Shown in pieces: positions 26,430 to 50,253 of a stretch of DNA of 64,000 nucleotides. Each line of letters opens with the position of its first letter. Position 1 is the stretch's first letter. The notes beneath the pieces were generated by a model that had not been told where the DNA came from, did not search any database, and was given only the letters and a program-made list of their open reading frames with translations. The stretch spans positions 124,001 through 188,000 of IMG/VR virus record IMGVR_UViG_3300033049_000066, one strand, 5' to 3'. The translations under genes were made by a program, and so were the position numbers.

Positions 26430-26441
26430 ATTTAAAACCAG

Positions 26442-26631: not shown

Positions 26632-26847
26632 ATGTCAAAAAATAACAAAGTAACTAAAATTGCCGGGATCTTGCATACACAGAAAGTGGCATCGGCGTTT
26701 CGTGTTGGTAGTCGTAAGCTAGGAAAATCAGCACATGCTATGTCTAGCGATGCGCTATTATCTGTATTAGCAGACAAATCACAAAGCAAATTTCACAAAA
26801 GTGCGGCGGATGTCCTTAGTCTGCGTGGTGTAGATTTAACAGCATAA
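26632..26847 (+). CDS. Small basic protein
   Basis: AAGGA RBS; TAGACA-TATAAT promoter. Confidence 0.65.
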   Translation: MSKNNKVTKIAGILHTQKVASAFRVGSRKLGKSAHAMSSDALLSVLADKSQSKFHKSAADVLSLRGVDLTA

Positions 26848-26854
26848 CCAGAAT

Positions 26855-26929
26855 GGGATCGTAACTCAAGCGGCAGAGCCCCGACTCTTAATCGGCGAGA
26901 TGTGATTTCAATTATCACCGGTCCCACCA
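26855..26929 (+). tRNA. tRNA-Lys(CTT)
   Basis: ctCTTaa; CCA. Confidence 0.85.
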
Positions 26930-26944
26930 AATTTAATATAATAA

Positions 26945-27020
26945 GGGTTGCTAACTCAATTGGCAGAGTACTCGGCTTTTAACCGAGAAGTTCCCGGATC
27001 GTTGCCGGGGCAACCCGCCA
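26945..27020 (+). tRNA. tRNA-Lys(TTT)
   Basis: CTCGG-ctTTTaa-CCGAG; CCA. Confidence 0.9.
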
Positions 27021-27025
27021 AATAT

Positions 27026-27186
27026 AGGTGTATGGCGGAATTAGCAGACGCTAAGTTATACGCAATCTTACTAGACGAGCCGCAATATTAAATTTGGTAC
27101 TGCCTACTGAATTTTATTATTGTGAATGGATACAAGGGCAGCAAAACATGCTCGTCGTGCAGGTGCAACTCCTGCTACACCTACCT
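27026..27186 (+). ncRNA. tRNA-Leu-like RNA with a giant variable arm
   Basis: AGGTGTA/TACACCT; Leu-type D arm; GACGAGC(27074)/GCTCGTC(27150); T arm GCAGG-TGCAACT-CCTGC. Confidence 0.6.
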
Positions 27187-27195
27187 AATTTAGAA

Positions 27196-27218
27196 TAGTG
27201 CCCCGGACCGGGGCACTA
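27196..27218. terminator. Hairpin between convergent transcription units
   Basis: TAGTGCCCCG-gac-CGGGGCACTA. Confidence 0.65.
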
Positions 27219-27220
27219 AA

Positions 27221-28333
27221 TTACTCGAACGTAATAATTATATCGTTAATGATGTAGCCGCCTGTTTTCGTGTGCTTAAAGAGCAGCGTATTATCGCCAT
27301 CCTTCCAGTACGAAGATGGAACAGTAAATGATAGTGAGACTGTCTTAGCATCATGTACTGCGCCGCCTTCAATGCCGAACAATATAATAGCTGGGTTGCC
27401 GTTAATAATTAATTCACCTTCGTCCTTAAAGTCCGGGTCGGTTACATTTAATGTAATAATACTATTTGAAGTAGTACTTGGTTTGCTAACCGCAAATGTT
27501 ATTGTAGCTTCCTCAGGAGCTGTCGCTGATAAACTAACTGGCAATACACCGCTGTTGTCGATTACAATTGTTTCATCTACCTCAAACGTTACAGCTACAT
27601 TGTAAATTTTATAACCAGCTGTCTTTGTATGTTTGAAAAGCAATGTGTTATCGCCATCCTTCCAATATGCTGCTGGTGTAGCAAACGATATATTAACTCG
27701 CTTAGCATCATGTACTGCGCCGCCTTCGGAGCCGAACAATATAATAGCTGGGTTGCCGTTAATAATTAATTCACCTTCATCGATGAAATCTGGATCGTAA
27801 ACATCAAGCACCATTATTCCACTTATGGCGTTACTTGGCTTATTGACCGCAAGCGTTATTGTAAATTCTTGCGGCGCAGTACCTTCTAAATCAGCAAGTA
27901 CACCAGGTACTGTTGGTACAGTTGGTACAGTTGGTACACCAAACGTAAATGTTGGCTTAGATGGTTTTGATGTGTTAATAGTTGATCGCTGTATTTCATT
28001 ACTATATCGAGATACTCTATTTTGAGTATCAGTCGTTGTCATCACGAAATAATAATTTGTGGAAAACGGCAAATCAAGTGTTGCGGTTACGTCAGTATTT
28101 GACGAAATCCAAACCTTATCGTTATACACACCAGAAGTAGTTCCGTAATGTATAGAGTATCCTTTTATTTCACTTAGCGGAAGTGATTCCCAGGTGCTAC
28201 AGTTGCTGGCAGACGCACCCTTAGGTGCCGCACAGGCGTCTCGCTCAGTTGGAATTTCCCATTTTAAAGTAAAGGGGGTTGCACTAACGCTAACGGACAC
28301 TAATAAGAGAAGTAGGGCTAAAAAGTTTTTCAT
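27221..28333 (-). CDS. Secreted FN3-like protein with two repeated beta-sandwich domains
   Basis: Signal VSA/; LKWEIP..IKGYSIHYG..SRYSNE; duplicated DPDF.DEGELIINGNPAIILFG...WKDGDNTLLFKHTKT. Confidence 0.75.
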   Translation of the reverse strand: MKNFLALLLLLVSVSVSATPFTLKWEIPTERDACAAPKGASASNCSTWESLPLSEIKGYSIHYGTTSGVYNDKVWISSNTDVTATLDLPFSTNYYFVMTTTDTQNRVSRYSNEIQRSTINTSKPSKPTFTFGVPTVPTVPTVPGVLADLEGTAPQEFTITLAVNKPSNAISGIMVLDVYDPDFIDEGELIINGNPAIILFGSEGGAVHDAKRVNISFATPAAYWKDGDNTLLFKHTKTAGYKIYNVAVTFEVDETIVIDNSGVLPVSLSATAPEEATITFAVSKPSTTSNSIITLNVTDPDFKDEGELIINGNPAIILFGIEGGAVHDAKTVSLSFTVPSSYWKDGDNTLLFKHTKTGGYIINDIIITFE

Positions 28334-28388
28334 TTAAATACCCCCTTAAACCATGAAAGAAGAGCGTTTATCCTTTCAAGGAGTCTTA

Positions 28389-28718
28389 TTAGCTCGCTGT
28401 AAAATTTACAGGTATGCTCGGTTCGACAGCTATAACAAATTCTAATTGCGCCCAGTCACTAGTAATACCGTTAATGTCAACTTCGCGCACACCAGCTGTC
28501 CAGTTACCAGCTTCAATTGGATTAGCCAGATCGGATATTGGTGCTACAAAAGATTGACTATTGGATATAACACCCATGATTATATTAAAATCGCTATCAG
28601 GAGCGCCAGTTGGCTTAATTGCTAAATCATAGCCTTTACGCTGTGAAGCGTCATATGTGCTTGAGTCAACGCGAGTTGTTGCGCCGTCCCAGGTAAATTC
28701 AGTTGGATTGATTATCAT
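28389..28718 (-). CDS. FN3/Ig-like small protein
   Basis: FTWD...GYDL...GNW..VREVD.NG..SDW; ATAAATA upstream. Confidence 0.6.
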   Translation of the reverse strand: MIINPTEFTWDGATTRVDSSTYDASQRKGYDLAIKPTGAPDSDFNIIMGVISNSQSFVAPISDLANPIEAGNWTAGVREVDINGITSDWAQLEFVIAVEPSIPVNFTAS

Positions 28719-28761
28719 TTTATTTTCCTATGTGATGTAACTATTTATCGTCTCTTACAAA

Positions 28762-29349
28762 TTACCAGGGAATTAATGATATTAATTTGTTAATGAAAGA
28801 TTTTTTAGTAGTCTTCATTGCTCTGTAACGTTCCCAGTCAAACAGTTTGCCGGGGTCTGTTTTACGCCTTGGTGACACATGATCGTGCCCGGCGATGTTC
28901 GCGACTGGGAATTTGTAAGTACGAAGTAATTCTTCGGTTAGTTCAATAAGTGCATCGTACTGCGCATCAGTATAGCCGCTTTCTTGGGTGGCAATCAGCT
29001 CGATGCCAAGCATCCAATTATTGCAATTGTCGTACCCGAGCCAGCGTGAACGACCAGCATGCCAGGCCTTCATCGGCAGTGGAACAAGATCGTAAACTGT
29101 ACCGTCTCGAGATATCATGTAGTGCGCAGATGCGTACATGCGATTAGGCAAATCTTTCATCTTAAACCACTTGCGATCTTTTTCCGGACGGTTTAAATCC
29201 TTAAATAATTGAATACATTTTTCAGGGTTAAATGGTTCGTCCGGAAACTGATACTTGCCACTGAAATAGTGAATTACAATGCCGTTAACTACTTTCATCT
29301 TAGATGAACTATAGCAATAATCTGGAAGCTTTTCGATAACTTTTTTCAT
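28762..29349 (-). CDS. N-acetylmuramoyl-L-alanine amidase (Amidase_2/AmpD-like), probable endolysin
   Basis: IVIHY, SAHY, AWHAG, GIEL, GHDHVSPRRKTDPG. Confidence 0.9.
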   Translation of the reverse strand: MKKVIEKLPDYCYSSSKMKVVNGIVIHYFSGKYQFPDEPFNPEKCIQLFKDLNRPEKDRKWFKMKDLPNRMYASAHYMISRDGTVYDLVPLPMKAWHAGRSRWLGYDNCNNWMLGIELIATQESGYTDAQYDALIELTEELLRTYKFPVANIAGHDHVSPRRKTDPGKLFDWERYRAMKTTKKSFINKLISLIPW

Positions 29350-29413
29350 TTTTGGACTCCTATCGAGTATTTATTAGGTTGACAAACAGGCAGGAAAATT
29401 ATATAATATATAG

Positions 29414-29887
29414 ATGATAAATCAAATTACAGGTAATTTATTTTCAGTAAAAGAAGGCTACATTATACACGGGTGCAACGCACAAGGTGTAATGGGTGCT
29501 GGGGTCGGGAGGACTATGAAATTCACATACCCGGGCGCATACAACATATATAAAAATTACATCAACAAAGCACGTGAATTAGGTGTATCCCCACTGGGAT
29601 CAAATACATATTATGCCATGAACAAATTAGTTATTATTAACGCTGTGACACAAGAATACTACGGAAATGACGGAAAGCAATACACCGATTATGATGCTGT
29701 TCGTGCTTGTTTTTATGATATAAATGCAGAAATTTTGCGATCACAAGAAATATTTGATAATATTCCCCGAGTGCTTAACTTTCCGATGATTGGATGTGGC
29801 TTTGGTGGTGGCAACTGGGAAGTTATAGAAGCTATCATAGAAAAAGAAATTAATAATAGTTTTGAAATGGTCTTATGGACTTTATAG
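29414..29887 (+). CDS. Macro-domain (Appr-1-p/ADP-ribosylglycohydrolase-like) protein
   Basis: GNLF..IIHGCNAQGVMGAGV..PMIGCGFGGGNW. Confidence 0.9.
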   Translation: MINQITGNLFSVKEGYIIHGCNAQGVMGAGVGRTMKFTYPGAYNIYKNYINKARELGVSPLGSNTYYAMNKLVIINAVTQEYYGNDGKQYTDYDAVRACFYDINAEILRSQEIFDNIPRVLNFPMIGCGFGGGNWEVIEAIIEKEINNSFEMVLWTL

Positions 29888-29898
29888 ATACTGAATAA

Positions 29899-29985
29899 CC
29901 CTCGGTGATGAAATTGGTAAACATAGAAGATTTAAAATCTTCCGCCTGAACAGGCTTGCGGGTTCAACTCCCGCCTGAGGGACCA
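29899..29985 (+). tRNA. tRNA-Leu(TAA)
   Basis: GAAGA-ttTAAaa-TCTTC; CCA. Confidence 0.9.
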
Positions 29986-29991
29986 AACAAT

Positions 29992-30088
29992 CCAAAGATT
30001 ACGCCGATTCTCCGCGGAACGGTGAATGGATGCCTCGCTTAGGCGCAGGCTGTGAATAACGTTGGTTTGACTCCAACTCTTTGGGCCA
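29992..30088 (+). ncRNA. tRNA-like RNA with acceptor, T arm and CCA but aberrant D and anticodon arms
   Basis: CCAAAGA/TCTTTGG-GCCA; GTTGG-TTTGACT-CCAAC. Confidence 0.55.
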
Positions 30089-30127
30089 ATTTAAAAGTGT
30101 ACTTAGGGGTGGTTGAATGTGCAAAGG

Positions 30128-30201
30128 GGCGACTTTAGCTTAATGGTAAAGCCCTCGGTTGTGATCCGAAAAGATGCGAGTTCGAATCTTCGTAGGTCGC
30201 C
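30128..30201 (+). tRNA. tRNA-His(GTG) inside a 34-bp flanking stem
   Basis: G-1:C73; ttGTGat; no CCA. Confidence 0.85.
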
Positions 30202-30262
30202 CCTTTGCGCATTCAACCACCCCTAAGTACATTTACGTTACAACACATGATAAATACTTACT

Positions 30263-30484
30263 ATGAAAGCAAATGAAATTATGCACGAAAGAACTAGTAA
30301 CCGCATTAAGGTACAAATGCACGAATACGGACCTATTGGTAATCGAAAATATTCATTAGTGGATATGCGAACTCGTAAGACACGAGCTACATCGTTCAAC
30401 GGACAGTTTGAGGCGAAAGCATACGCAAACAAAAGGAATTGGTTTATTAGCCCCGTTAATATAATCGAACCCGTTTCCAATTAA
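30263..30484 (+). CDS. Small putative internal virion protein
   Basis: MKANEIMHE; ATAAATA upstream. Confidence 0.6.
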   Translation: MKANEIMHERTSNRIKVQMHEYGPIGNRKYSLVDMRTRKTRATSFNGQFEAKAYANKRNWFISPVNIIEPVSN

Positions 30485-30574
30485 TCAAGTTAACCTAAAT
30501 ACTAGACATTAGTCCTAAACGATAGTATAATTGTACAAAGAATCATATACAATTTAACACTAACCAGGACCTCT

Positions 30575-31735
30575 ATGAAAACAAAATTCATGATCGGCGG
30601 TGATACCGTACACGTATTCAATATGAACGAAGAACTAGCGTTGGATAAACTCCCGCCACGGATCTACACCGTCCGGTTTGACCCACTACAGGGCTTTCAT
30701 CTTGGCATCACAAAAGATAAGCTTGACTTGCCTAGTAAGATTTACGGTGAGACTCCAATGCGTGTACAAAAGTGTATAGATACATATACCGATCGTACTG
30801 CATCTACCGGCATTTTATTAACCGGTGATAAAGGTACAGGCAAAACATTATTGATGTCGTTGCTTGCAAATGAAATAATTAGCAAATTAAAATTGCCAGT
30901 AATACTCATTAAAGAGGCATACGAAGGTGGTGCGTTTACAAACTTCATTGAATCCATTGGCGAATGCGCTCTTGTGTTTGACGAATTCGGGAAAATGTAT
31001 TGTCCAAATTCGAGACGCAACGAGAATGATATACCTCAAACCTCATTATTATCATTAATGGATGGGGTTGACAAAACCAAGCGTATGTTTATTTTGACTG
31101 AAAACAGCGAGCTGGACATCAACGACTTCATGCTAAATCGTCCGAGTCGCATCTACTATCACTTCAAGTACAACAAGCTTGACGAAGGCAGCGTCATCGG
31201 CTACTGCGAGGATTATAAGGTCGGCACCGAGGAGATAAGAGATATCGTAGATCTTGCTCGGCGCTCACAGGTTTTTAGCTTCGATATGCTCCAGACTATC
31301 GTCGAGGAGCACCAGCGTTACGGTACGTCAATAGGCGAGGTTGCGGAAGATTTAAATATCGACACGCGCGAAGAACAGGGCGATATGATTGAGGTGCTAA
31401 AAATACTCGAGCGTGGCACGAAAAATGAGCGTGAGATCTATGGCACGCCGTACGTCACAAAACCTAACAGTAGCTACACGTACATCAACATCAAGGATAA
31501 TAAAATTGAAAGTTCTGAGGTTGAGATGCCAACTGCAACGGCAGTGGATAGCACTGATAGCAGCGAAGATAGCCCTGTATGCGCAAGCGAGGAAAATAAC
31601 TATCGCTCCGAGTACGTCGAGGCGAAGAACTTAGCTTACGAAAAAGATGGGCAGCTGGTTTACGAAACAGAAAAATTCACCTTCATCGCAAAAGATATGC
31701 CCAAGCTTCAAACAAATTATTTGAAATTTTTCTAG
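30575..31735 (+). CDS. AAA+ ATPase
   Basis: GDKGTGKT, LVFDEFGK, LLSLMDG, NRPSR. Confidence 0.9.
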   Translation: MKTKFMIGGDTVHVFNMNEELALDKLPPRIYTVRFDPLQGFHLGITKDKLDLPSKIYGETPMRVQKCIDTYTDRTASTGILLTGDKGTGKTLLMSLLANEIISKLKLPVILIKEAYEGGAFTNFIESIGECALVFDEFGKMYCPNSRRNENDIPQTSLLSLMDGVDKTKRMFILTENSELDINDFMLNRPSRIYYHFKYNKLDEGSVIGYCEDYKVGTEEIRDIVDLARRSQVFSFDMLQTIVEEHQRYGTSIGEVAEDLNIDTREEQGDMIEVLKILERGTKNEREIYGTPYVTKPNSSYTYINIKDNKIESSEVEMPTATAVDSTDSSEDSPVCASEENNYRSEYVEAKNLAYEKDGQLVYETEKFTFIAKDMPKLQTNYLKFF

Positions 31736-31744
31736 GTAAACGAA

Positions 31745-32137
31745 ATGCGCACTAAATTATTAATTCTTGTAACTTTAACAGCACCACTATTTTTAATTGA
31801 CTGGTCGGCCAAGGAGAAGAGTTCCGGTGGTGAGGTCGACGCACTTTACTGGCACGGAGGGAGTCGCTACACCGTGAAGGACGACAATGGGGGCCTGATC
31901 ACAAGCAGAACGATACCGCCCTGGGGTAGTCCACACAACGGCAATGTCATTGTGTACAGTGATCTTGCTCCGGGAGAAAAAACTTGGTATCTCTGTGAGT
32001 GGGATTGGAGTTGGATGTACGGCACGATGGGTGGGGATGCGAATTGTGAAATTCACATTCACGGACTAGATGATATCATCCCCGGTAATTGGGATCATGG
32101 CAAATTTGGCAGAGGGTCAATCACACGCATAGAATAA
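31745..32137 (+). CDS. Membrane-anchored hypothetical protein
   Basis: Hydrophobic N-terminus; WDHGKFGRG. Confidence 0.65.
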   Translation: MRTKLLILVTLTAPLFLIDWSAKEKSSGGEVDALYWHGGSRYTVKDDNGGLITSRTIPPWGSPHNGNVIVYSDLAPGEKTWYLCEWDWSWMYGTMGGDANCEIHIHGLDDIIPGNWDHGKFGRGSITRIE

Positions 32138-32157
32138 AATATCGCCAAAAAGAATAC

Positions 32158-32233
32158 AGTGACATAGCTCAATTGGCAGAGCACGAAGCTCATAACTTCG
32201 AAGACGCAGGATCGTTGCCTGCTGTCACTACCA
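32158..32233 (+). tRNA. tRNA-Met(CAT)
   Basis: AGTGACA/TGTCACT; ctCATaa; CCA. Confidence 0.88.
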
Positions 32234-32270
32234 GACACTGAACAAATAGCAGTTAACTGCAGGAGGTAAC

Positions 32271-32747
32271 ATGTTCACCGTAGATGAAAAAACAGAAATA
32301 GTACAGTACTTAAAAGATATGCCCGCGAATTCCTCAGTGTATATCGGTTCTGACTCCGTGAAATACAAACGCAAGGGGTTATGGTACGCTCGGTACAACG
32401 TAGCATTCATTGTCCACATTGCATCAAAGCACGGTGGTAAGATTTTTCACACTACATCTGTCGAACGTGATTACGATCCTAAGAAGGAAAAGCCTCGTAT
32501 GCGACTAATGACCGAAGTATACAAAGCCGTAGGTGTTTACATGGAATTCGCGGAGGTACTTGAAGATTTACCTGTCGAAATCCACATCGATGTTAATTCA
32601 GATGAGAAGCACAACTCCAGCATCGTGCTGCGAGAAGCACTTGGCTACATCAAAGGAATGACCGGACTAGATGGAGTGCCTAAGCCAGATGCCTGGGCCG
32701 CATCGACGGTTAGTGATTACGGTGCCAGAGGGAAATTTACACACTAA
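32271..32747 (+). CDS. RNase H-like YkuK-family protein
   Basis: VYIGSDS, RLMTEV, EIHIDVN, KPDAWAAS..SD. Confidence 0.85.
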   Translation: MFTVDEKTEIVQYLKDMPANSSVYIGSDSVKYKRKGLWYARYNVAFIVHIASKHGGKIFHTTSVERDYDPKKEKPRMRLMTEVYKAVGVYMEFAEVLEDLPVEIHIDVNSDEKHNSSIVLREALGYIKGMTGLDGVPKPDAWAASTVSDYGARGKFTH

Positions 32748-32776
32748 GGATTCAATCGCGCAAGGATGCGCATTTT

Positions 32777-32852
32777 GCCGTCGTAGCTCAGTTGGTAGAG
32801 CGCAGACCTGGTACGTCTGAGGTCATCGGTTCAACCCCGATCGTCGGCTCCA
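32777..32852 (+). tRNA. tRNA-Thr(GGT)
   Basis: CAGAC-ctGGTac-GTCTG; CCA. Confidence 0.9.
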
Positions 32853-32892
32853 ATTTTAGATGCATTATAATGCTCGTATGATAAATACCGTT

Positions 32893-33876
32893 ATGCCAAG
32901 ACATAAAAAAATCGCGCAAAGACATGCGAAAATTCTTAATATACAGAATCCCGCAACAGGGAAATTTGAGTTAGATAAAATTAAAACAAAATACGATAGA
33001 ATCCTTAAATACTCATTTGCGGAAATATATATTATAGACGCTGGAACTATGAAGTTCACCGAAGTCAGCGCAAACGCACTGCGGAACCTCGGCTACACGC
33101 TGGCGGAGATGCAGAAGATGAAGGCTGGTGACGTCGCACCTCAGCTTTCTGCCGGGCAATGTAACAAGATTTTTGTTGCGTTGAACAGTGGGGAAAATGA
33201 GGTCGCGAAGATGAAAACAGTTATTTTGCGCAAAGATGGATCAGAGTACAAAGTTAATCTTCGCGTACAGTACGCGAGTGGTGAAGACCCAGTGTACATC
33301 ATAATGGCGTCGGACATCACAGAACGTGACAGGTACGAAGCTGAGTTAAAAGCCCTTGCCTTCCGAGACCCCGGCACAGATTTGTACAATAGACGGTACT
33401 TCTTAGAACACCTTAGGGGAACGATAAACCATGCTAACAGAATGCACTCTCCTATTGGATTAATTTTAATCGACATGGATGATTTTAGTAAGGTCAATAA
33501 CAATTACGGACACATCGCTGGTGACAAGGTAATCTCAGATTTTGCAAATAAGATATGCGATGTATTTTCAAGGAAGACAGACGTCGTAGCAAGATACGGT
33601 GGGGATGAATTTGTAGTGCTGTGTATCGACAATTCCGCTGAAACATTAATCGCAAAATGTAACCAGCTTATAGCTCGACTAAACAAAGCATTGTACTACG
33701 ACGGTCACACAATTGTCCAAACCGCAAGCATAGGCATTTGCCACTACAACGCGAATGCTATAACAATCTCAACTGAGGATCTTATTAACGGTGCTGACAT
33801 TGCTATGTACAAGGCCAAGGCAGCTGGTAAAAATCAAGTCAAAATATGTAACAACGACGACCTCAATGAGGATTAA
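32893..33876 (+). CDS. PAS-GGDEF diguanylate cyclase
   Basis: PAS (..RKDGS..DITE), NRRYF, IDMDDF..VNN.YGH.AGD, RKTD I-site, RYGGDEF; start placed after ATAAATA. Confidence 0.92.
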   Translation: MPRHKKIAQRHAKILNIQNPATGKFELDKIKTKYDRILKYSFAEIYIIDAGTMKFTEVSANALRNLGYTLAEMQKMKAGDVAPQLSAGQCNKIFVALNSGENEVAKMKTVILRKDGSEYKVNLRVQYASGEDPVYIIMASDITERDRYEAELKALAFRDPGTDLYNRRYFLEHLRGTINHANRMHSPIGLILIDMDDFSKVNNNYGHIAGDKVISDFANKICDVFSRKTDVVARYGGDEFVVLCIDNSAETLIAKCNQLIARLNKALYYDGHTIVQTASIGICHYNANAITISTEDLINGADIAMYKAKAAGKNQVKICNNDDLNED

Positions 33877-33894
33877 TGGCAATAATATTTAGGA

Positions 33895-34205
33895 ATTACT
33901 ATTTGAAGCTAAAGTAGGTTATCACGGACAAGGGTGCAAATCCCTTCATTTCCACCAAAAGCATCTTTTTACAAGGGTTCTTTTGGGGGATGATTTCAGA
34001 TTCGACGTGGGACTGAGGATAAGTGGATAGTACGGCAACGCAGAAGTCGTGACACTTGAAGAAGCAAACTTAAAATAATCGCAAACGATTCATTTTACAC
34101 TGAGGAATTAATGGCTGCGTAAAGCGCCACCCTCTGAGGTTGAAACAGCCTTATAACCAGCTTGTTAGTCGTGCCCTATTGACGAATGAACACAATGTAG
34201 GGGAC
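33895..34205 (+). ncRNA. ssrA: Circularly permuted (two-piece) tmRNA; tag ANDSFYTEELMAA*; outer boundaries approximate
   Basis: T arm + CATTTCC-ACCA (ends 33957) lies upstream of GGGGATG...GATTCGAC (33986); tag at 34081-34122. Confidence 0.88.
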
Positions 34206-34216
34206 GCGATACTTTT

Positions 34217-34290
34217 GACTCTATAGCATAATGGCAGTGCGAGGGATTGCAAATCCTTAGATCCCGATTCGACTTCGGGTAGAGTCTCCA
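34217..34290 (+). tRNA. tRNA-Cys(GCA)
   Basis: GACTCTA/TAGAGTC; ttGCAaa; U73-CCA. Confidence 0.9.
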
Positions 34291-41501: not shown

Positions 41502-41538
41502 GTTGACAGATTCGCAGAAGAGCGTATAATATATACAC

Positions 41539-41666
41539 ATAGGCTATGCAGGACGGGAGTTGTGCCCGTAACTAGTTCCTTCTAACTTAAACTTGAAGTT
41601 GGCTTGCTGAGGTTTCGGCCTCCGCGGTCAACATGCGCAAACACGCAACTACCTGCAATTACCTAT
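41539..41666 (+). ncRNA. Y-RNA-like ncRNA, copy 1
   Basis: ATAGG-CTA-TGCAGG..TAGTT / AACTA-CCTGCA-ATTA-CCTAT; loop motif TCCTTCTAACTTAAACTTGAA; follows TTGACA(41503)-TATAAT(41525). Confidence 0.65.
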
Positions 41667-41682
41667 ACTTAACAATTGAATT

Positions 41683-41748
41683 TGCGGCTATAAAAAGACT
41701 TCCTTCTAACTTAACTTGAAATTAAACTTAGTCTTTTAACTTTCCGCA
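41683..41748 (+). ncRNA. Y-RNA-like ncRNA, copy 2 (minimal)
   Basis: TGCGG-CTAT-AAAAAGACT / AGTCTTTT-AACTTT-CCGCA; loop TCCTTCTAACTTAACTTGAA. Confidence 0.65.
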
Positions 41749-41770
41749 CTTATTTTAACAGAGGCGCTAC

Positions 41771-43837
41771 ATGGAACAGAAAATCGCAATTAAACTCGCT
41801 GGTGGAATTATCCTTCCGCTTAACAAGCGTAAAGAAGATATTGGGTACAGTTTATCTTTCATTTCTAATTTAATGGCACACGGTTATATGCCAGATAAAA
41901 AATTATCAAATGCACTCAGCGAACTTTCTGTTACAGACATAACGTCTTTGTCCGAAGCCGTCATGCCGGTCCTTAAGGAACTGGTGGGCGCAAATGTTGT
42001 TCACAAACCCATGTATCCAAATTTTCCTAAGCAGGTAATGGAGGCTGACGCTGCTGAATTATTCCGGGTAGCGCAGGCACACTATTTCACAAAAGGTAAG
42101 TGGATGCCCGAGTTTCACCTAAATGACAGACCTCTGGCCTACGAAAATGTAAACTTCAAGACTCTTAGCATAGTAGATGGTCATGACATGGACCAAGTGT
42201 TTACTAATATCTTACAAAGTGCAGATTCAATTTCAGAATTTAACAAATCTGTGCTGGCGTGGTTTATCGCAAATCGCACATTCGTCATCCCCGAGAAAAT
42301 TCCCTTCAAGGAAAATGTTTGCGTAGTTGCAGGACTGCTACTTGACGCTGATATGTGGAACAGCACTCTCGTAAAAGATACGACTGATATCCTGCGAATT
42401 GTGACGTTCATCAACGGTGGGGATATTTCTCTCGCTGAGAACACGAAATTTAAGTCTCTGCCGAGACGCGTGAGAAAATTGCTAATTCTGGATTTGGAGC
42501 GTGTGGCGCGAGAGGAAGATTTTGCCCGGCACAGTAACAAGTGGATAAAATTATTTCACAATCTTCACGTTGGTGACTATTCTTCGTCGCTCTACCAGAT
42601 TGCGAAAAAATTGCGAGAGAATAAGAAAATTACAACGTTCAATGGTCGACTTGAAGCTCTGCTATCTATCCCGGATGTGAAAGATTGCATCACTTTGCTA
42701 CAGCAGCGCCCAGGGATTTTCGCGAGGAAAATACTCGAGCTTATCTCCAAGGACCCAACAGATAAGAAGGGCATTGTCGACGCATTCTCGAGCGTGGTGG
42801 ACGATGTGCCGGCACGAAATTTGACGCAACTCCTGGGCGCGGTGAAGGTCCGTGGGGGCGTGGTACAGAAGAGGGTCGTCTTTCCAAAAGGCCTAGTACA
42901 GCATGCCTACGTTCTACGCAACGAATTAGCGCGGTTGAATCCAGCTGTGCGTACACATCTCAATGATGTAGTGACCGCATCGCTTAAAAAACGTTTTAGC
43001 GGCTTGGACGCGCTCGGCAAGGTTTATATTGACCCTGCTTTGTACGAATGCCCGCTGCCTGTTGGAATGCGGTCAGCAAGTGAAGGCTTGCGAGAAGTTG
43101 CGCGAGGCACACGCATGCCTATTGGCAACAAGGGGACGTTGCGTCTTTTTGTGTACTGGAAGGGTGAGGACATTGATTTGTCGGCTACGTTCCATGACGA
43201 AAATTTTAATCAGGTTTACACTGTCTCGTACTCCAATCTTAATGCGCGCCATTTTGACGCGGTACACAGTGGCGATATCGTCAGCGCACCAAACGGTGCT
43301 AGTGAGTTCGTAGACGTAGACATTCAGTCGGTGCTTGATGCTGCATACGATATACGATACGTAGCAATGCACGTAATGGTCTTTACTGGGCCAGCTTTCA
43401 AAGAGCACGATGTTTGCTTTGCTGGATGGATGACGCGTGATAAAACTAACAGCAATGCTATATATCATCCTAAGACTGTGGAACAAAAGATTGATATTCG
43501 TGGGGCGACTAAAAATGTTATTCCTGTGATTTTTGACCTTAAGAAACGTAAGGCAATTTGGACTGACATCAGCACGAACGGTAAGGGCTTCAGCACAGAC
43601 GGTAACAAGACACCGAGCGGAAACAATGTCGAAAACAATAAAGCTACAATCGAAGATATGGTCGAAGCTTTTACAAGTCTCGACAATAAAATTACGCTCG
43701 GGGAACTATTTGAAATGCACGGACAGGCACGTGGCAACCTTGTCACCGACCGCAAGGATGCGGACTTTATTTTTGCGATGGACGACGCCGATGTGACGCC
43801 GTATGATATTATCGACATCAACGCTAATTTTTTATAA
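41771..43837 (+). CDS. TROVE-like helical protein with C-terminal TerD domain (Prok-RING_4-type architecture without RING)
   Basis: HKPMYPNFP, IPFKEN, TDILR, WIKLFHNLH, RPGIFAR; TerD-like LRLFVYW..DIDLSA..HSGDIVSAPNGASEFVD. Confidence 0.75.
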   Translation: MEQKIAIKLAGGIILPLNKRKEDIGYSLSFISNLMAHGYMPDKKLSNALSELSVTDITSLSEAVMPVLKELVGANVVHKPMYPNFPKQVMEADAAELFRVAQAHYFTKGKWMPEFHLNDRPLAYENVNFKTLSIVDGHDMDQVFTNILQSADSISEFNKSVLAWFIANRTFVIPEKIPFKENVCVVAGLLLDADMWNSTLVKDTTDILRIVTFINGGDISLAENTKFKSLPRRVRKLLILDLERVAREEDFARHSNKWIKLFHNLHVGDYSSSLYQIAKKLRENKKITTFNGRLEALLSIPDVKDCITLLQQRPGIFARKILELISKDPTDKKGIVDAFSSVVDDVPARNLTQLLGAVKVRGGVVQKRVVFPKGLVQHAYVLRNELARLNPAVRTHLNDVVTASLKKRFSGLDALGKVYIDPALYECPLPVGMRSASEGLREVARGTRMPIGNKGTLRLFVYWKGEDIDLSATFHDENFNQVYTVSYSNLNARHFDAVHSGDIVSAPNGASEFVDVDIQSVLDAAYDIRYVAMHVMVFTGPAFKEHDVCFAGWMTRDKTNSNAIYHPKTVEQKIDIRGATKNVIPVIFDLKKRKAIWTDISTNGKGFSTDGNKTPSGNNVENNKATIEDMVEAFTSLDNKITLGELFEMHGQARGNLVTDRKDADFIFAMDDADVTPYDIIDINANFL

Positions 43838-46428: not shown

Positions 46429-47508
46429 ATGCAGATGATGAAAAAACAATACGATTTAGTCGTTTATATCGGCAGATTTCAACCAAGACACAACGGCCAC
46501 CGCGAAACAGAGCGGATAGCGTCGACATTAGCAGATAATGTGCTAATACTAATCGGGTCCGCAAATGGGCCTCGCACTACACGAAACCCCTGGACATACA
46601 AAGAACGTGCTGCTGAAATCCGCGAGGATTCCGAAGTCATGAATCTCATGATCGACGGATTAGATGATTACACGTACAATAATAACAAGTGGGTACAGCA
46701 AGTTGGTGAGAAAGTTCAACGTGCGATCGACAAGGTTATTGAAATTGATTTATACACTTCTTCACCGGATTCGCTCAGCAAAGGTGACACCGTTAACGTC
46801 GCAATTGTAGGGCATGATAAAGATCACACTAGTGATTATCTAAACAATTTCCCCCAGTGGGATTACATCGAAGTTCCAGCATATCCTTCAAGCACTGATA
46901 GAATTGATTCCACTAAAATTAGACAGCTAATGTTCAGTGGACAATTGTCATTTATTGACGGGGTGGTTCCGGGCAGTCAAGTCCGTGATTTTACAAAGTC
47001 CAAGGAATTTGCAGGATTACTTGACGAATGGAACTACATCGCAGAATATAAAAAAGCTGCTAGCGCCGCACCGTACGAAACGATCTACACAACCGTAGAC
47101 GCTGTCGTTGAACAAAGTGGGCACGTTCTGCTCGTTCAACGAGGCAGTTTCCCCGGCAAAGGCTTGTGGGCAATGCCCGGTGGATTTATTAATCCCAAGG
47201 AAAGAATTGTAGATGGCATTATTCGTGAACTACGTGAAGAAACAAAACTTAAAGTACCCGAGAAAGTACTGCGAGGATCAATCACGCACCGAGACGTTTT
47301 TGACGATGTCGAGCGTTCGACACGTGGGCGCACAATTACTCACACTGCGTTAATCCAATTAGATAATGCATCCTCATTACCAAAAGTGAAAGGAAGTGAC
47401 GATGCGATGAATGCCAAGTGGTTCTCACTTGCAGAGTTTGAAACAATGAAAAATATCATGTTCGAAGATCACTATTCGATTATAAAAAATATGCTGAGTA
47501 GAGCATAA
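46429..47508 (+). CDS. nadM: Bifunctional NMN adenylyltransferase / Nudix ADP-ribose pyrophosphatase (NadM-Nudix)
   Basis: YIGRFQPRHNGH, RNPW, STKIR; Nudix PGG..RELREET; RGRTIT; GSDDA. Confidence 0.92.
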   Translation: MQMMKKQYDLVVYIGRFQPRHNGHRETERIASTLADNVLILIGSANGPRTTRNPWTYKERAAEIREDSEVMNLMIDGLDDYTYNNNKWVQQVGEKVQRAIDKVIEIDLYTSSPDSLSKGDTVNVAIVGHDKDHTSDYLNNFPQWDYIEVPAYPSSTDRIDSTKIRQLMFSGQLSFIDGVVPGSQVRDFTKSKEFAGLLDEWNYIAEYKKAASAAPYETIYTTVDAVVEQSGHVLLVQRGSFPGKGLWAMPGGFINPKERIVDGIIRELREETKLKVPEKVLRGSITHRDVFDDVERSTRGRTITHTALIQLDNASSLPKVKGSDDAMNAKWFSLAEFETMKNIMFEDHYSIIKNMLSRA

Positions 47509-47538: not shown

Positions 47539-47853
47539 ATGAAAATTATAGCAACCACAACCGAGAAGAACTTTTTAGTAGAAGCTACTGAATCTGAACT
47601 TATGACATTAGTTGGTCTCTCAAATACTAATAATGCACGGTCACAAGATTTTAAACATAGTCGGTTACGAGTTAATGGCGAAATTGATGTTAGTAAATTC
47701 GCCAAGACCGCATCTTATGTTCGGAGGATGGATGAGCAGAATTTACAAAGAATTAAGGAGTTTCTAACGGGCGCCATCGATAATATCGATGAGGCTACTG
47801 ACACTGTAAACAAAATAAACTTATTTGACATGTTAGGTGATGAAGATGAATAG
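47539..47853 (+). CDS. Hypothetical protein
   Basis: AGGAG RBS. Confidence 0.65.
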   Translation: MKIIATTTEKNFLVEATESELMTLVGLSNTNNARSQDFKHSRLRVNGEIDVSKFAKTASYVRRMDEQNLQRIKEFLTGAIDNIDEATDTVNKINLFDMLGDEDE

Positions 47854-48769
47854 CCTACTACTCGCTCACTGGTACGCACCAGAGGCGGTGAAAGAAATGG
47901 CCGACTACGTTGGTGACAGTCTCGGACTGATACAAGAAGCGCAAAGGATCAACCCTGAGAGGCTAGTATTTGCTGGGGTGAAGTTCATGGGAGAAACAGC
48001 GAAGGTTATGCTCCCTGATACTACTGTCGTTATGCCGGATATCAACGCAACGTGTTCTCTTGTTACGCAAACTAACATAGAGGATTTATATGCCTGGGAT
48101 TCCGCAAATCGAGAGACCGCTAAGAAAAATGGGCGGGACGTTACTCACATTATGTACATAAACAGTTCTGTTGATATGAAGGCAGTTGCTGACATTATTG
48201 TTACATCAGCAAATGTAAATGCGGTGGTTGAGGATGAGATCGCCAAGGGCAATAAAGTCATTTTTAGCCCTGACAAAAACATGGGCAAATACATCAACCA
48301 AGAATTTAATTATGATATGACCGTGTTCTCGTCAGTTTGCGAAGTTCACGACGCATTTAACATTAACCAGCTTAACGAAGATATGGGTGGGTGGACGGAT
48401 GGTAGCAAATTCTTAGTGGCACATCCTGAGAGTCCAATTGAGGTATTAAACAAAGCTGATTTTGTAGGCAGTACTAACAAAATGCTACAGTGGATTATTG
48501 ATTTCCCGTACAAGGTAGGCACGATTTGGGTAGCGACTGAAGCCGGACTCTTGTTTGATATGAAAAAGGCGCGGCCCGGGCTTGACATTAGGCCGGTATC
48601 CGCGTATAATGGATGTATGTGCAATGAATGTCCTTATATGAAATTAAACACCATAGACGCGGTACAGCAAGCAATAAATGGTGCCAGCGGTACTGTTATT
48701 GATTATTTAACAGATGAGCAATTGGAAGCGGCACGTAAACCAATTGAACGTATGTTAATTCTTAACTAA
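47846..48769 (+). CDS. nadA: Quinolinate synthase
   Basis: LAHWY, GDSL, GVKFMGET, TCSL, YINSS, TSAN, CEVH, AHPE, GST, TE, ECPYMK. Confidence 0.93.
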   Translation: MNSLLLAHWYAPEAVKEMADYVGDSLGLIQEAQRINPERLVFAGVKFMGETAKVMLPDTTVVMPDINATCSLVTQTNIEDLYAWDSANRETAKKNGRDVTHIMYINSSVDMKAVADIIVTSANVNAVVEDEIAKGNKVIFSPDKNMGKYINQEFNYDMTVFSSVCEVHDAFNINQLNEDMGGWTDGSKFLVAHPESPIEVLNKADFVGSTNKMLQWIIDFPYKVGTIWVATEAGLLFDMKKARPGLDIRPVSAYNGCMCNECPYMKLNTIDAVQQAINGASGTVIDYLTDEQLEAARKPIERMLILN

Positions 48770-48786: not shown

Positions 48787-50253
48787 ATGAACAAAATACA
48801 AAACATGTTCGCACCACAAGCGAACGACATAGCATACACAGAAGATAAGAAATTAAACATTAGCTTGATATGCAGAATTGACAGCTATAAATTTTCGCAT
48901 CCGTTTGCCTATCCGAACGATATAAACATTGATGGGATGACCTCATACGGTGAGACCCGCGTGTCACCAAAAGATACAATCGTTCCATTTGGTATGCAAA
49001 TGCTTCTTAAGCGTTATCTTACTCAGACAATTACAATGGCTGACATTGACGCGGCTGAGGATTTTAGCACCGCACATTTCGGCAGGACACTGTTTGATCG
49101 CAGTGCGTGGGAAAAAGTTGTCCGTGAATACGCTGGCAAGCTCCCGCTGATAATCAGAGCGGTTCCGGAAGGAACAGTCATGAATGGTAGCCAGCCCATC
49201 TACTCAGTTACAGTGCTAGACAGAGATTTGTTCTGGATGAGTGCCGGCTTTGAAACGCTCATCCAACGCGCGATTTGGTACCCGACGACGATTGCCACGA
49301 TGGATTACATCGTGCGCAATGAGATGGAAGCGTTCTACGATAAGACAGGGGCTGACAAATCTTTGCTCCCGTTCGCCCTGCATGATTTTGGAGGACGTGG
49401 GGTGAGCAGTGCGGAAACCGCCGAGATTGGTGGCGCCGCGCATCTTGTTAATTTTCTAGGCAGTGACACGGTCGAGGGCGTTCTTGCTGCGAATTTCTAC
49501 TACAAGGAAGAAATGAGCGGGTTCAGCGTGTACGCTACGGAGCATGCCATACAGTGTTCCTTCGGTAGCGGGACAGATGACGCGCTACGCTATCTTAGAC
49601 GACAGCTACGCAATGCCCCGCCGGGTTCCGTCGTAAGCATTGTTATTGACGGTTACGACGTGTATCGTGAAGCAAATCTACTATGCACCGTGATGAAGGA
49701 TGAGATTATCGCCAGCAAGGCAAAGGTCGTGTTCCGGCCGGACAGTGGGGACATGATGGAAATTATCCCTCGCTTGCTATTGATGCAATCAGAAGCATTC
49801 GGTACTACAAAAACTGCCGAGGGCTACTTACAAATAAATTATGTCGGGCTCATCCAAGGGGATGGAATTGACAGAGCGATTATTAGCGAGGTCTTGGATT
49901 TAGTTACGTTCTTGGGCTTTGCGGCTGATACGGTGATGTTCGGCAGTGGAGGCGCTTTGCTACAAAAAGTGAATCGTGACACGCTGAAATTCGCACAGAA
50001 GGCCTGCGCTATTCTCGTGGATGGTGAGTGGGTTGGTATCGCAAAAGACCCAATTACCGATCACGGTAAGAAGTCCAAGGAAGGGGTATTGACTCTCGCA
50101 AGAAATATCGAGAGTGGTGAGCTAACGACGGCGCGGTTAGACCAGGGGTCGTTGCCGGCGGGGATGGAAGACGCGATGAAGCTCGTGTACTTCAAAGGGG
50201 ATTTGTTCAATGAAATTACATTCGCAGAGGTCAGAAAAAATGTTATCAAGTAA
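48787..50253 (+). CDS. nadV: Nicotinamide phosphoribosyltransferase (Nampt)
   Basis: DSYKFSH, LHDFGGRG, GSDT, ATEH, RPDSGD, QGDG, FGSGGALLQ..NRDT, KDPITD..KKSK. Confidence 0.95.
   Translation: MNKIQNMFAPQANDIAYTEDKKLNISLICRIDSYKFSHPFAYPNDINIDGMTSYGETRVSPKDTIVPFGMQMLLKRYLTQTITMADIDAAEDFSTAHFGRTLFDRSAWEKVVREYAGKLPLIIRAVPEGTVMNGSQPIYSVTVLDRDLFWMSAGFETLIQRAIWYPTTIATMDYIVRNEMEAFYDKTGADKSLLPFALHDFGGRGVSSAETAEIGGAAHLVNFLGSDTVEGVLAANFYYKEEMSGFSVYATEHAIQCSFGSGTDDALRYLRRQLRNAPPGSVVSIVIDGYDVYREANLLCTVMKDEIIASKAKVVFRPDSGDMMEIIPRLLLMQSEAFGTTKTAEGYLQINYVGLIQGDGIDRAIISEVLDLVTFLGFAADTVMFGSGGALLQKVNRDTLKFAQKACAILVDGEWVGIAKDPITDHGKKSKEGVLTLARNIESGELTTARLDQGSLPAGMEDAMKLVYFKGDLFNEITFAEVRKNVIK

What the first reader, a model, noticed from the sequence alone, without database searches (positions are those of the whole stretch)
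41503..43837. TROVE-like/TerD protein preceded by two tandem Y-RNA-like ncRNAs: candidate phage ribonucleoprotein system
Seen: a sigma70 promoter (41503-41530) is followed by a 230-nt non-coding leader holding two copies of one RNA fold. Each copy has a 5-bp outer stem, an internal loop starting GG-CUA(U), an inner stem, and a near-identical pyrimidine-rich loop UCCUUCUAACUUAA(A)CUUGAA (about 41577 and 41701). The stem sequences differ between copies (TGCAGG/CCTGCA vs AAAAGACT/AGTCTTTT) but stay paired, which is compensatory change. Copy 1 also has extra inserted hairpins. Known (from memory of Pfam Prok-RING_4): proteins with this helical N-terminus plus C-terminal TerD are described as having ROT/TROVE-like repeats, and Ro60/TROVE proteins bind adjacently encoded Y RNAs through a bulged terminal stem. 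Inference: a Ro60/Y-like RNP with TerD in place of vWA and its own RNA family, possibly linked to the tRNA and RNA-repair genes in this window.
Basis: partly seen in the sequence, partly recalled or inferred. Interest (0 to 1): 0.9.

Follow-up and report, generated by a model that had tools for sequence, protein, structure and literature searches.

The report
Y-RNA-like partner RNAs of TerD-type protein
The two RNA folds in front of this phage gene belong to a widespread structured small-RNA family that I could not find in Rfam 15 or the searchable literature; it sits next to one protein family in hundreds of phages and bacteria and sometimes carries a tRNA look-alike, so it resembles the Ro60/Y-RNA particle, although I could not show that the protein is related to Ro60.

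Summary
A perfect sigma70-type promoter (41503-41530) drives a 240-nt leader with two copies of one RNA fold (41539-41666 and 41683-41748), followed by a 688-aa ORF.

The fold is a family. Its consensus is an outer stem ending in GG, a CYAU loop, an inner stem, UUCCUUCUA, a variable apical domain, YUAG, the returning inner stem, CUUU, then CC and the returning outer stem.

- **Linkage to the gene.** A covariance model built from 51 phage copies found 143 matches beside homologous genes in 57 of 60 phage loci. It found 128 matches in 74 of 80 bacterial loci from many phyla. All but one lie on the gene's strand, directly upstream or downstream. About 700 kb of unrelated DNA gave none.
- **Structure.** Both stems covary strongly.
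- **tRNA link.** Some copies carry a permuted tRNA-like domain, as YrlA Y RNAs do. Others lie between tRNA genes.
- **Neighbours and databases.** No other neighbouring gene is conserved. Rfam 15 has no matching family.

The protein is a RING-less relative of the MXAN_6230/SCO0854 family, with a helical-repeat N-terminus and a divergent TerD-like C-terminus. Pfam, profile-profile comparison and PDB fold searches did not confirm TROVE homology.

Best reading: a Ro60/Y-RNA-like ribonucleoprotein built from different parts. No expression or binding data were available.

The parts
41503..41530 (+). Sigma70-type promoter: TTGACA, 16-nt spacer, TATAAT. The predicted transcript start is 1-2 nt before the outer stem of module 1.
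   Evidence: 12 of 12 consensus match. The same promoter-to-module layout is kept in the related phages L117 and L118.
41539..41666 (+). RNA module 1, the long variant (128 nt). Outer stem 41539-41543 / 41662-41666. CUA loop 41544-41546. Inner stem 41547-41552 / 41652-41657. Inserted hairpin 41553-41569. Conserved UUCCUUCUA 41576-41584. Apical hairpins about 41598-41647. 3' strand of the internal loop, AUUA, 41658-41661.
   Evidence: MFE fold z = -3.0. Compensatory inner-stem changes in L117 and L118. Model R1 does not score it as a whole.
41683..41748 (+). RNA module 2, the canonical short form (66 nt). Outer stem 41683-41687 / 41744-41748. CUAUA loop 41688-41692. Inner stem 41693-41700 / 41730-41737. 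Conserved (C)UUCCUUCUA 41699-41708. UUAG 41727-41730. AACUUU 41738-41743.
   Evidence: R1 score 69.8 bits, E 6e-14, the only significant match in the window. MFE z = -2.95.
41760..41764 (+). Shine-Dalgarno-like AGAGG, 6 nt before the ATG. No terminator lies between module 2 and the ORF, so the RNAs and the mRNA are probably one transcript.
   Evidence: Sequence. The terminator scan found none in 41531-41770.
41771..43837 (+). ORF of 688 aa: a RING-less relative of the MXAN_6230/SCO0854 family. Helical-repeat N-terminal domain (aa 1 to about 430; 41771-43060). Beta-sandwich, TerD-like C-terminal domain (aa about 440-688; 43088-43834) containing HSGDIVSAPNGASEFVDV.
   Evidence: NCBIfam NF041916 E 4e-101. 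PHROG 33734. AF2 model pLDDT 85.8, pTM 0.82. ESM features place the C-terminal domain among TerD-named clusters. 3,523 clusters at 50% identity in the family.

Best explanation
The leader encodes two members of a widespread structured small-RNA family that is absent from Rfam 15 and that I did not find in the searchable literature. I call it the GGCYAU/UUCCUUCUA module. It is most likely the dedicated RNA partner of the adjacent 688-aa protein.

Proposed mechanism:
1. In this phage the RNAs and the protein mRNA are transcribed together from the promoter at 41503. The transcript starts at the foot of module 1.
2. The two modules are probably cut out of the 5' UTR as species of about 128 and 66 nt.
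3. The protein binds the two invariant internal loops (CYAU opposite RCUUU, and UUCCUUCUA opposite YUA), which two covarying stems hold in place.
4. The variable apical domain is a small hairpin here and a T-arm or a whole permuted tRNA-like domain in relatives. It is presented to something else, plausibly tRNA-handling enzymes, ribosomes or RNases.

This is the same logic as Ro60 with Y RNA/YrlA, but neither the RNA nor, as far as I can detect, the protein is a member of those families.

Shown: the RNA fold, its covariation, its strict linkage to and co-orientation with the gene family, and the tRNA-like inserts. Inferred: that the RNAs are stable, that they are processed, that the protein binds them, and the downstream function.
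For: - RNA structure. The inner helix was not used to pick the seed sequences, yet it is 84% paired with double changes at 8 of 9 pairs, against 39-51% in slid controls. In model-aligned sets, 92% of cells pair across 143 phage copies, with double changes at 13 of 14 pairs. The figure is 96% across 128 bacterial copies that were not in the seed, with 12 of 14 pairs.
- Linkage. R1 matches occur in 57 of 60 non-redundant phage loci and 74 of 80 bacterial loci. Of 271 matches, 270 are on the gene's strand, mostly within a few hundred nt upstream or downstream.
- Specificity. About 710 kb of other viral DNA, including a canonical Ro60 locus, gave no match; the only four matches in that search lay on a contig that itself encodes a homolog.
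- Reverse test. Searching 2.9 million viral contigs with the RNA pattern alone returned 117 new stretches, and 77 of them encode the protein within the stretch.
- Neighbours. No other protein-coding neighbour is conserved.
- Not merely a leader. The modules lie downstream of the gene in about a third of loci. They form arrays of up to 8 motif copies. They are interleaved with tRNA genes on the tRNA strand, 5-10 nt from them, in the genomes of close relatives.
- tRNA-like domains. Some modules carry one in the YrlA order of T-arm, closed acceptor stem, D-arm (compare PMC4201824). In one bacterium the module replaces the anticodon loop of a normally ordered tRNA.
- Cultured phages. XacN1, Weasels2, RcXuper and LpeD carry the modules in unannotated gaps beside the gene.
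Against: - No RNA-seq run could be listed for this phage, so discrete RNAs are unproven.
- There is no direct evidence that the protein binds RNA. It has no recognised RNA-binding domain.
- Homology to Ro60 was tested and not found.
- In the window the modules sit in the 5' UTR, so a purely cis-regulatory role is not excluded for this locus.
- Module 1 departs from the consensus and R1 does not detect it.
- Three phage loci and six bacterial loci (at least one of them, L194, cut off about 40 nt upstream of the gene) have no module within the fetched flanks.
- Some genomes keep modules far from the gene.
Confidence: 0.7

Rival explanations
1. The modules are only cis-acting leader elements. The protein, or a metabolite, binds its own mRNA to control translation or stability, and no separate RNA is made.
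For: In the window and its close relatives both modules lie between the promoter and the start codon with no terminator in between. In many bacteria the last module ends 10-30 nt before the start codon.
Against: About a third of loci have the modules after the stop codon. Arrays of up to 8 motif copies extend more than 1 kb from the gene. Extra copies sit inside tRNA arrays tens of kb away in the same genomes. tRNA-like domains make no sense in an operator. No Rfam riboswitch matches.
Confidence: 0.12
2. The modules are tRNA-related RNAs that act on their own, for example as processing signals, decoys for anticodon nucleases or tRNA mimics. They merely travel with the protein gene in tRNA islands and do not bind it.
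For: Modules are interleaved with tRNA genes. Some contain tRNA-like domains. The invariant CUUCUA(A) equals the anticodon loop of tRNA-Arg(UCU) in three of four phage tRNAs examined.
Against: In bacteria the pair occurs without tRNA arrays, and the RNA is still immediately next to the gene, on its strand, in 74 of 80 loci across many phyla. The protein is the only conserved neighbour. The conserved 9-mer is not placed as a 7-nt anticodon loop closed by a stem.
Confidence: 0.1
3. The repeat is a chance similarity, a mobile-element repeat or a DNA-level site such as an operator or att site, with no RNA structure.
For: Only two copies occur in the window, and the whole leader folds only marginally better than shuffles (z = -1.7).
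Against: All matches but one are on one strand (270 of 271). There are extensive compensatory changes in both helices and no matches in about 700 kb of control DNA.
Confidence: 0.01

Closest known systems
Ro60 (TROVE + vWA) with Y RNAs, especially bacterial and phage YrlA/YrlB (Rfam RF02553; Chen et al. 2014, PMC4201824)
   Same: One or more small RNA genes sit beside the gene for a protein made of helical repeats plus a second domain. They are on the same strand and often co-transcribed upstream. Each RNA is a terminal stem with a conserved loop or bulge plus a variable domain. At least some copies carry a tRNA-like domain in the order T-arm, closed acceptor stem, D-arm. Other copies keep only a T-arm-like hairpin, as YrlB does. 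The pair occurs in both bacteria and large phages, often near tRNA genes.
   Different: The protein has no detectable TROVE or Ro60-type vWA domain, whereas the Bxz1 Ro control hits both at about E 1e-50. The C-terminal domain is a TerD-like beta-sandwich. The RNA lacks the GNCGAA(N)G / GGUCCGA Ro-binding motif and has GGCYAU ... UUCCUUCUA ... CUUUCC instead. Rfam's Y_RNA and YrlA models do not match it, and my model does not match the Bxz1 Ro locus.
MXAN_6230/SCO0854 family RING-domain proteins (NCBIfam NF041916; Pfam PF14447 Prok-RING_4)
   Same: Clear sequence homology over residues 282-664 (E 4e-101). More distant phage homologs carry the Prok-RING_4 finger, and one of them (L170) has a module just upstream. 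From memory, Pfam describes this architecture as a RING finger, an alpha-helical domain, ROT/TROVE-like repeats and TerD, with a suggested RNA-processing role.
   Different: The window protein lacks the RING finger: the equivalent segment has no Cys/His pattern. It scores below the family cutoff (339 against 600 bits). I found no record of an associated RNA for this family in the searchable literature.
TerD family (Pfam PF02342), calcium-binding beta-sandwich proteins of tellurite-resistance / Ter stress systems
   Same: The C-terminal beta-sandwich contains an HSGD...G..E..D.D signature, which from memory resembles the TerD HSGDN.TG..GDDE motif. One homolog hits PF02342 at E 6.6e-4. ESM features place the domain among TerD-named clusters at 0.93-0.96. 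NCBI names one homolog 'TerD family protein'.
   Different: The window protein and 27 relatives give no Pfam TerD hit. No TerD structure appears among the PDB fold matches. No other ter genes are nearby.
Other tRNA-associated phage RNAs: tmRNA with SmpB, GOLLD and ROOL
   Same: They are encoded in or next to phage tRNA clusters. tmRNA also combines a tRNA-like domain with a protein partner and occurs in circularly permuted forms. GOLLD lies just downstream of the homolog in locus L123.
   Different: Size, structure and conserved sequences are all different, and Rfam models for these families do not match the modules.

Membership tests
Ro60 / TROVE protein family | Pfam TROVE domain (PF05731) | tested here: not met
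   No hit at E up to 1 in the window protein or in 27 relatives. Positive control: Bxz1 gp220 hits at E 9e-50.
Ro60 / TROVE protein family | Ro60-type vWA domain that closes the ring (PF25045) | tested here: not met
   No hit. The C-terminal domain is an all-beta sandwich in the AF2 model. The control hits at E 4e-54.
Ro60 / TROVE protein family | Remote homology by profile-profile comparison | tested here: not met
   hhalign of A1 (28 sequences) against A6 (25 Ro60 orthologs): probability 0.06%, E 0.78. Both profiles have low diversity (Neff about 2.6), so very remote homology is not excluded.
Ro60 / TROVE protein family | HEAT-repeat ring fold resembling solved Ro60 structures | tested here: inconclusive
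   Foldseek against the PDB gave only generic alpha-solenoid matches, with no Ro60 in the top 50. The best solenoid matches had E 0.05 or worse; the one better hit for the whole protein (7jtk_A, E 4e-3) is also not Ro60. BFVD rank 15 is a predicted phage 'TROVE domain-containing protein', E 8.8e-3, TM 0.25-0.30.
Y RNA / YrlA (Rfam RF00019, RF02553) | Match to the Rfam covariance models | tested here: not met
   Nothing on the leader at E up to 10. Nothing at gathering score in 16 phage and 20 bacterial loci. As a control, YrlA is found at 32.5 bits upstream of Bxz1 Ro.
Y RNA / YrlA | Ro-binding motif GNCGAAN0-1G (or GGUCCGA) near the 5' end (PMC4201824) | tested here: not met
   The modules begin NNNGG-CYAU. 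No such motif appears in the family consensus.
Y RNA / YrlA | tRNA-like domain (T-arm, closed acceptor stem, D-arm) | tested here: inconclusive
   Absent from both window copies. Present in a minority of family members: 34 of 358 intervals (some overlapping) carry a T-loop motif, and roughly a dozen have the full T / acceptor / D layout, for example L207, L128, L122 and L124.
Y RNA / YrlA | Encoded next to, and on the same strand as, the partner protein gene | tested here: met
   Met for the analogous protein rather than Ro60.
MXAN_6230/SCO0854 RING family (NCBIfam NF041916) | Full-length HMM match above the curated cutoff, including the N-terminal RING | tested here: not met
   339.5 bits against a cutoff of 600. 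Only profile positions 381-764 of 842 are matched. No Prok-RING_4 hit. It is a homolog, but a RING-less subfamily.
TerD family (PF02342) | Pfam TerD domain match | tested here: inconclusive
   Not matched in the window protein. A relative with 25% identity (L183) matches at E 6.6e-4, below the gathering score. ESM features support a TerD-like domain.
   Copy 2 (41683-41748): 69.8 bits, but it was in the seed. Copy 1 is not matched as a whole (6.8-bit fragment); it is assigned from its motif elements and covariation in L117 and L118.

The most novel reading that the evidence does not exclude
This is a second class of tRNA-mimicking ribonucleoprotein, evolved independently of Ro60 and shared by bacteria of many phyla and by large phages. 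The 9-nt UUCCUUCUA is near-invariant from Bacillota to Planctomycetota. It contains CUUCUAA, the anticodon loop of tRNA-Arg(UCU). In this reading it is not just a protein handle but engages a universal partner such as the ribosome, a tRNA-modifying or tRNA-cleaving enzyme, or an anticodon nuclease. Phages would embed these RNAs in their tRNA arrays to protect, repair or police the tRNA pool during infection.
Probability: 0.2. Interest if true: 0.92.

Novelty: new variant of a known kind. Interest (0 to 1): 0.82.

Why it matters
Ro60 with Y RNA is so far the only well-known family of protein-partnered, tRNA-mimicking non-coding RNAs shared by animals, bacteria and phages, and its function is still debated.

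A second system with the same design but different parts would show that this architecture is a recurrent solution. The design is a covarying stem with invariant loops, a swappable apical domain that can be a whole tRNA body, and a gene tightly linked to a protein made of helical repeats plus a beta-sandwich.

It would also:
- give a function lead for a large protein family (about 3,500 clusters at 50% identity) that is annotated as 'hypothetical' or 'TerD family';
- explain unannotated gaps in the tRNA islands of jumbo phages;
- add a well-supported RNA family, with more than 270 instances here, to the catalogues.

Cultured carriers make it directly testable: Xanthomonas phage XacN1, Rhodococcus phage Weasels2, Rhodobacter phage RcXuper, Lactobacillus phage LpeD, and Brevibacillus, Paenibacillus and Heyndrickxia strains.

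Tried and rejected
- Rfam. A gathering-score scan of the whole window found only 24 tRNA matches and a permuted tmRNA. A permissive scan of the leader found one spurious scaRNA match. Thirty-six related loci gave nothing relevant.
- Megablast of the locus against GenBank phages: no match.
- Protein searches. Pfam, PDB-sequence and PADLOC searches of the protein found nothing.
- Fold searches. The PDB gave only generic solenoid or beta-sandwich noise.
- Ro60 homology. hhalign against Ro60 was negative.
- Conserved neighbours. An all-against-all clustering of flanking ORFs in 150+ loci found none; the nucleotidyltransferase seen near the gene in XacN1 and RcXuper is not general.
- Expression. 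Only DNA metagenome runs hold the sequence and no RNA run was listed.
- Exact 15-mer search in viral contigs: mostly chance hits, later reused as a negative control.
- UUCCUUCUA as an anti-Shine-Dalgarno mimic or an rRNA-pairing guide: I considered this and left it as speculation, because 6-7-nt complementarities are expected by chance.
- Literature. Searches for the protein family, the RNA motif or TROVE with TerD found nothing describing this pair. The Annual Review on bacterial Ro60 was not held.
Full report
**1. What is in the window**

The + strand carries a perfect sigma70-type promoter: TTGACA at 41503-41508, a 16-nt spacer, and TATAAT at 41525-41530. A 240-nt stretch without an ORF follows, then a Shine-Dalgarno-like AGAGG (41760-41764) and a 688-codon ORF (41771-43837).

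The 15-mer TTCCTTCTAACTTAA occurs exactly twice in the 64-kb window, at 41576 and 41700. Folding the leader gives two modules of the same design:
- Module 1 (41539-41666): outer stem AUAGG/CCUAU, loop CUA, inner stem UGCAGG/CCUGCA.
- Module 2 (41683-41748): outer stem UGCGG/CCGCA, loop CUAUA, inner stem AAAAGACU/AGUCUUUU.

Each module folds better than its shuffles (z about -3). The whole leader does so only marginally (z = -1.7). The predicted transcription start lies 1-2 nt before module 1. No terminator separates module 2 from the ORF.

The window comes from a 293-kb uncultured marine phage contig, IMGVR_UViG_3300033049_000066. It also holds 25 tRNA genes and a permuted tmRNA.

**2. The fold is a conserved RNA family**

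The protein has many homologs: more than 795 in the 90%-identity collection and 3,523 clusters at 50% identity. I fetched 73 phage loci encoding homologs at 25-70% identity.

A simple 5'-half pattern (GGCYA, 5-16 nt, CTTCT) occurred 165 times on the gene's strand and 15 times on the other. The hits clustered just upstream or just downstream of the gene.

I extracted closed modules and aligned 51 short ones (alignment A2). The consensus is:

NNNGG CYAU [7-9-bp stem] (C)UUCCUUCUA ... variable ... YUAG [stem'] RCUUU CC NNN

Across more than 270 instances, GG, C, A, the nine nucleotides CUUCCUUCU, UAG, and UUUCC are each 74-100% conserved.

My script selected the outer helix for pairing, so its 100% pairing in A2 is circular. 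The inner helix was not selected. It is 84% paired, with double (compensatory) changes at 8 of 9 pairs. The covariation score for the whole 14-pair structure is 0.81, against 0.13-0.22 when the partner columns are slid.

**3. Linkage to the protein gene**

I built covariance model R1 from A2 and searched with it.
- **Phage loci.** In 60 non-redundant loci (461 kb) it found 143 matches at E up to 0.01, all on the gene's strand, in 57 loci. They lie immediately upstream or downstream of the gene.
- **Bacterial genomes.** A scan found 393 loci with homologs. The best 80 span Gammaproteobacteria, Planctomycetota, Bacillota (Brevibacillus, Paenibacillus, Heyndrickxia, Niallia, Priestia), Cyanobacteria, Acidobacteriota, Saccharibacteria and others. 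In these, R1 found 128 matches, 127 on the gene's strand, in 74 loci.
- **Covariation in an independent set.** The bacterial copies were not in the seed. They are 96% paired, with double changes at 12 of 14 pairs. Their alignment was fitted to the model, which favours the structure. The phage set gives 92% and 13 of 14.
- **Negative control.** I searched 721 kb: 79 unrelated viral loci that even contain the exact 15-mer, plus 50 kb of mycobacteriophage Bxz1 including its canonical Ro60 gene. The only matches were on a contig that itself encodes a homolog.
- **Reverse test.** I searched all viral contigs with GGCTAT-N7-10-CTTCCTTCTA. Of 117 new stretches returned, 77 contain the protein gene. 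Several of the rest come from contigs that encode it elsewhere.
- **Neighbours.** No other protein-coding neighbour is conserved.
- **Cultured phages.** Xanthomonas XacN1, Rhodococcus Weasels2, Rhodobacter RcXuper and Lactobacillus LpeD have the gene annotated as 'hypothetical' or 'cytoplasmic protein'. Their modules lie in unannotated gaps beside it.

**4. Independent small-RNA genes with tRNA connections**

In about a third of loci the modules follow the stop codon. In Heyndrickxia camelliae, for example, two modules are followed by a U-tract. Arrays reach 8 motif copies by the pattern scan and 6 significant R1 matches.

In the genomes of the window's closest relatives (L117 at 70% identity, L118 at 59%) and in others, extra modules lie inside tRNA gene arrays. 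They are on the tRNA strand and sometimes 5-10 nt from the flanking tRNAs. That placement suggests co-transcription and co-processing with tRNAs.

A minority of modules carry a permuted tRNA-like body in the apical domain: a variable loop, a T-arm (GGUUCGAAUCC), a 7-bp acceptor stem closed by a loop, U8-A9, and a canonical D-arm. The 'anticodon stem' opens onto the conserved junction. Of 358 intervals (some overlapping), 34 carry a T-loop motif and roughly a dozen have the full layout. Others keep only a T-arm-like hairpin. This is the domain order described for YrlA (PMC4201824).

In a Planctomycetota genome the same parts occur in the other circular permutation. The RNA has normal tRNA ends and matches the Rfam tRNA model at 49 bits. 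The module is inserted where the anticodon loop would be, and its outer stem is capped by a loop.

The window's own two modules have no tRNA-like domain. Module 1 belongs to a clade-specific long variant with a 17-nt hairpin, within about 23 extra nucleotides, between the inner stem and UUCCUUCUA. R1 does not score it. Its inner stem covaries among the three related phages.

**5. The protein**

- **Sequence families.** Pfam gives nothing for the window protein or 27 relatives. NCBIfam NF041916 (MXAN_6230/SCO0854 RING family) matches residues 282-664 at E 4e-101, below the family cutoff and without the RING part. PHROG 33734, of unknown function, matches the full length.
- **Distant homologs.** Two carry Prok-RING_4 and one hits TerD at E 6.6e-4.
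- **Model.** The AF2 model is confident (pLDDT 85.8, pTM 0.82). It has a helical-repeat domain of about 430 residues and a C-terminal beta-sandwich.
- **C-terminal domain.** ESM features place it among TerD-named clusters at 0.93-0.96. It contains HSGD...G.SEF.D.D, which from memory resembles the TerD calcium-site signature.
- **TROVE claim.** I tested this four ways.
  - Pfam is negative, while the Bxz1 Ro control hits TROVE and vWA_Ro60 at about 1e-50.
  - hhalign of the family profile against 25 Ro60 orthologs gives 0.06% probability.
  - Foldseek of the whole model and of a separately predicted N-terminal domain against the PDB returns only generic alpha-solenoids, with no Ro60 in the top 50.
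  - BFVD returns full-length phage homologs, plus a weak match to a predicted TROVE protein at rank 15 (E 8.8e-3, TM 0.25-0.30).
- **Conclusion.** 'TROVE-like' remains an unverified label taken from a database comment. The protein is a helical-repeat plus TerD-like protein, and is not demonstrably Ro60-related. PADLOC has no match.

**6. Interpretation**

The most economical reading is a two-component ribonucleoprotein system. The invariant internal loops, held by covarying stems, would be the protein's binding site. The swappable apical domain, including tRNA mimics, would be the business end. This works like Ro60 with Y RNA/YrlA but fails the membership tests for both the protein and the RNA.

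In this phage the RNAs are probably processed from the 5' UTR of the protein's mRNA. M. smegmatis YrlA and YrlB are likewise cut from a single precursor encoded upstream of rsr. A purely cis-regulatory role cannot be excluded for this one locus. It does not fit the family as a whole.

Function beyond binding is open. The association with tRNA islands and tRNA mimicry points to tRNA or translation-related quality control or conflict. The window does hold an RlaP-type nucleotidyltransferase (13192-14190) and a T4 Rnl1-like RNA ligase (62295-63377). They are distant and not conserved neighbours.

The invariant CUUCUA(A) is identical to the anticodon loop of tRNA-Arg(UCU) in three of four phage tRNAs I read. 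It is not presented as a 7-nt loop, so I treat this as a curiosity.

**7. Novelty and limits**

Rfam 15 has no matching family. Full-text searches found no description of this RNA or of an RNA partner for this protein family. A jumbo-phage review only notes ROT/TROVE proteins in a few phages (PMC7824862). The literature library is incomplete, so prior description elsewhere cannot be excluded.

No RNA-seq run holding this sequence could be listed. Expression, processing and binding are therefore all inferred.

Noticed in passing
window 33897-34122 (+): Circularly permuted (two-piece type) tmRNA gene inside the phage tRNA island; Rfam RF04321, 81.7 bits.
   Followed up: no
window 18923-34290 (+): 25 tRNA genes, all on the + strand, interspersed with a GIY-YIG (SegE-like) homing endonuclease ORF (22046-22723). 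ARAGORN calls two tRNA-Gln(UUG) of 84-86 nt and other unusually long tRNAs.
   Followed up: no
window 32860-33876 (+): Phage-encoded PAS-GGDEF diguanylate cyclase (GGDEF E 4e-41), located between tRNA genes and the tmRNA.
   Followed up: no
window 11265-12086, 46429-47508, 47837-48769, 48787-50253 (+): NAD metabolism set: NAD kinase, NMN adenylyltransferase fused to Nudix, quinolinate synthase NadA, and a NAMPT/NAPRTase-family phosphoribosyltransferase.
   Followed up: no
window 13192-14190 and 62295-63377 (+): RNA-repair-type genes: an RlaP-family nucleotidyltransferase and a T4 Rnl1-like RNA ligase. There is also a Macro-domain ORF (29414-29887) and an RNaseH-like PF04308 ORF (32271-32747) in the tRNA island.
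   Followed up: partly
L123:5693-6159 (IMGVR_UViG_3300012036_000005): A GOLLD RNA (Rfam RF02032, 184.7 bits) with an embedded tRNA lies about 700 nt downstream of the homologous protein gene, in a locus that also has three modules upstream.
   Followed up: no
L202:2243-2381 (Planctomycetota MAG NORP49, NVWA01000004.1): A normally ordered tRNA-like RNA in which the GGCUAU/UUCCUUCUA module replaces the anticodon loop, followed by a U7 tract. It is the circular permutation opposite to the YrlA-like form.
   Followed up: partly
L291, L288, L305, L341 (genomes of L117, L118, L183/L184): Extra modules are interleaved with tRNA genes, far from the protein gene. L183 and L184 have no module beside the gene but several in their tRNA arrays.
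   Followed up: partly
L190 (Rhodococcus phage Weasels2) 4916-5271: The actinobacterial-phage variant of the module has CUUACUUCUA and GCUCACC in place of CUUCCUUCUA and ACUUUCC. This may reflect co-variation with its protein.
   Followed up: no
L189 and L191 (XacN1 ORF399; RcXuper gene 9): A 'nucleotidyltransferase' gene lies within 2 kb of the homolog in two cultured phages. It is not a conserved neighbour across loci.
   Followed up: partly
L314:1085-1161: ARAGORN calls a tRNA with a CUA anticodon ('tRNA-Pyl', an amber-suppressor type) in the tRNA array of a related huge phage.
   Followed up: no
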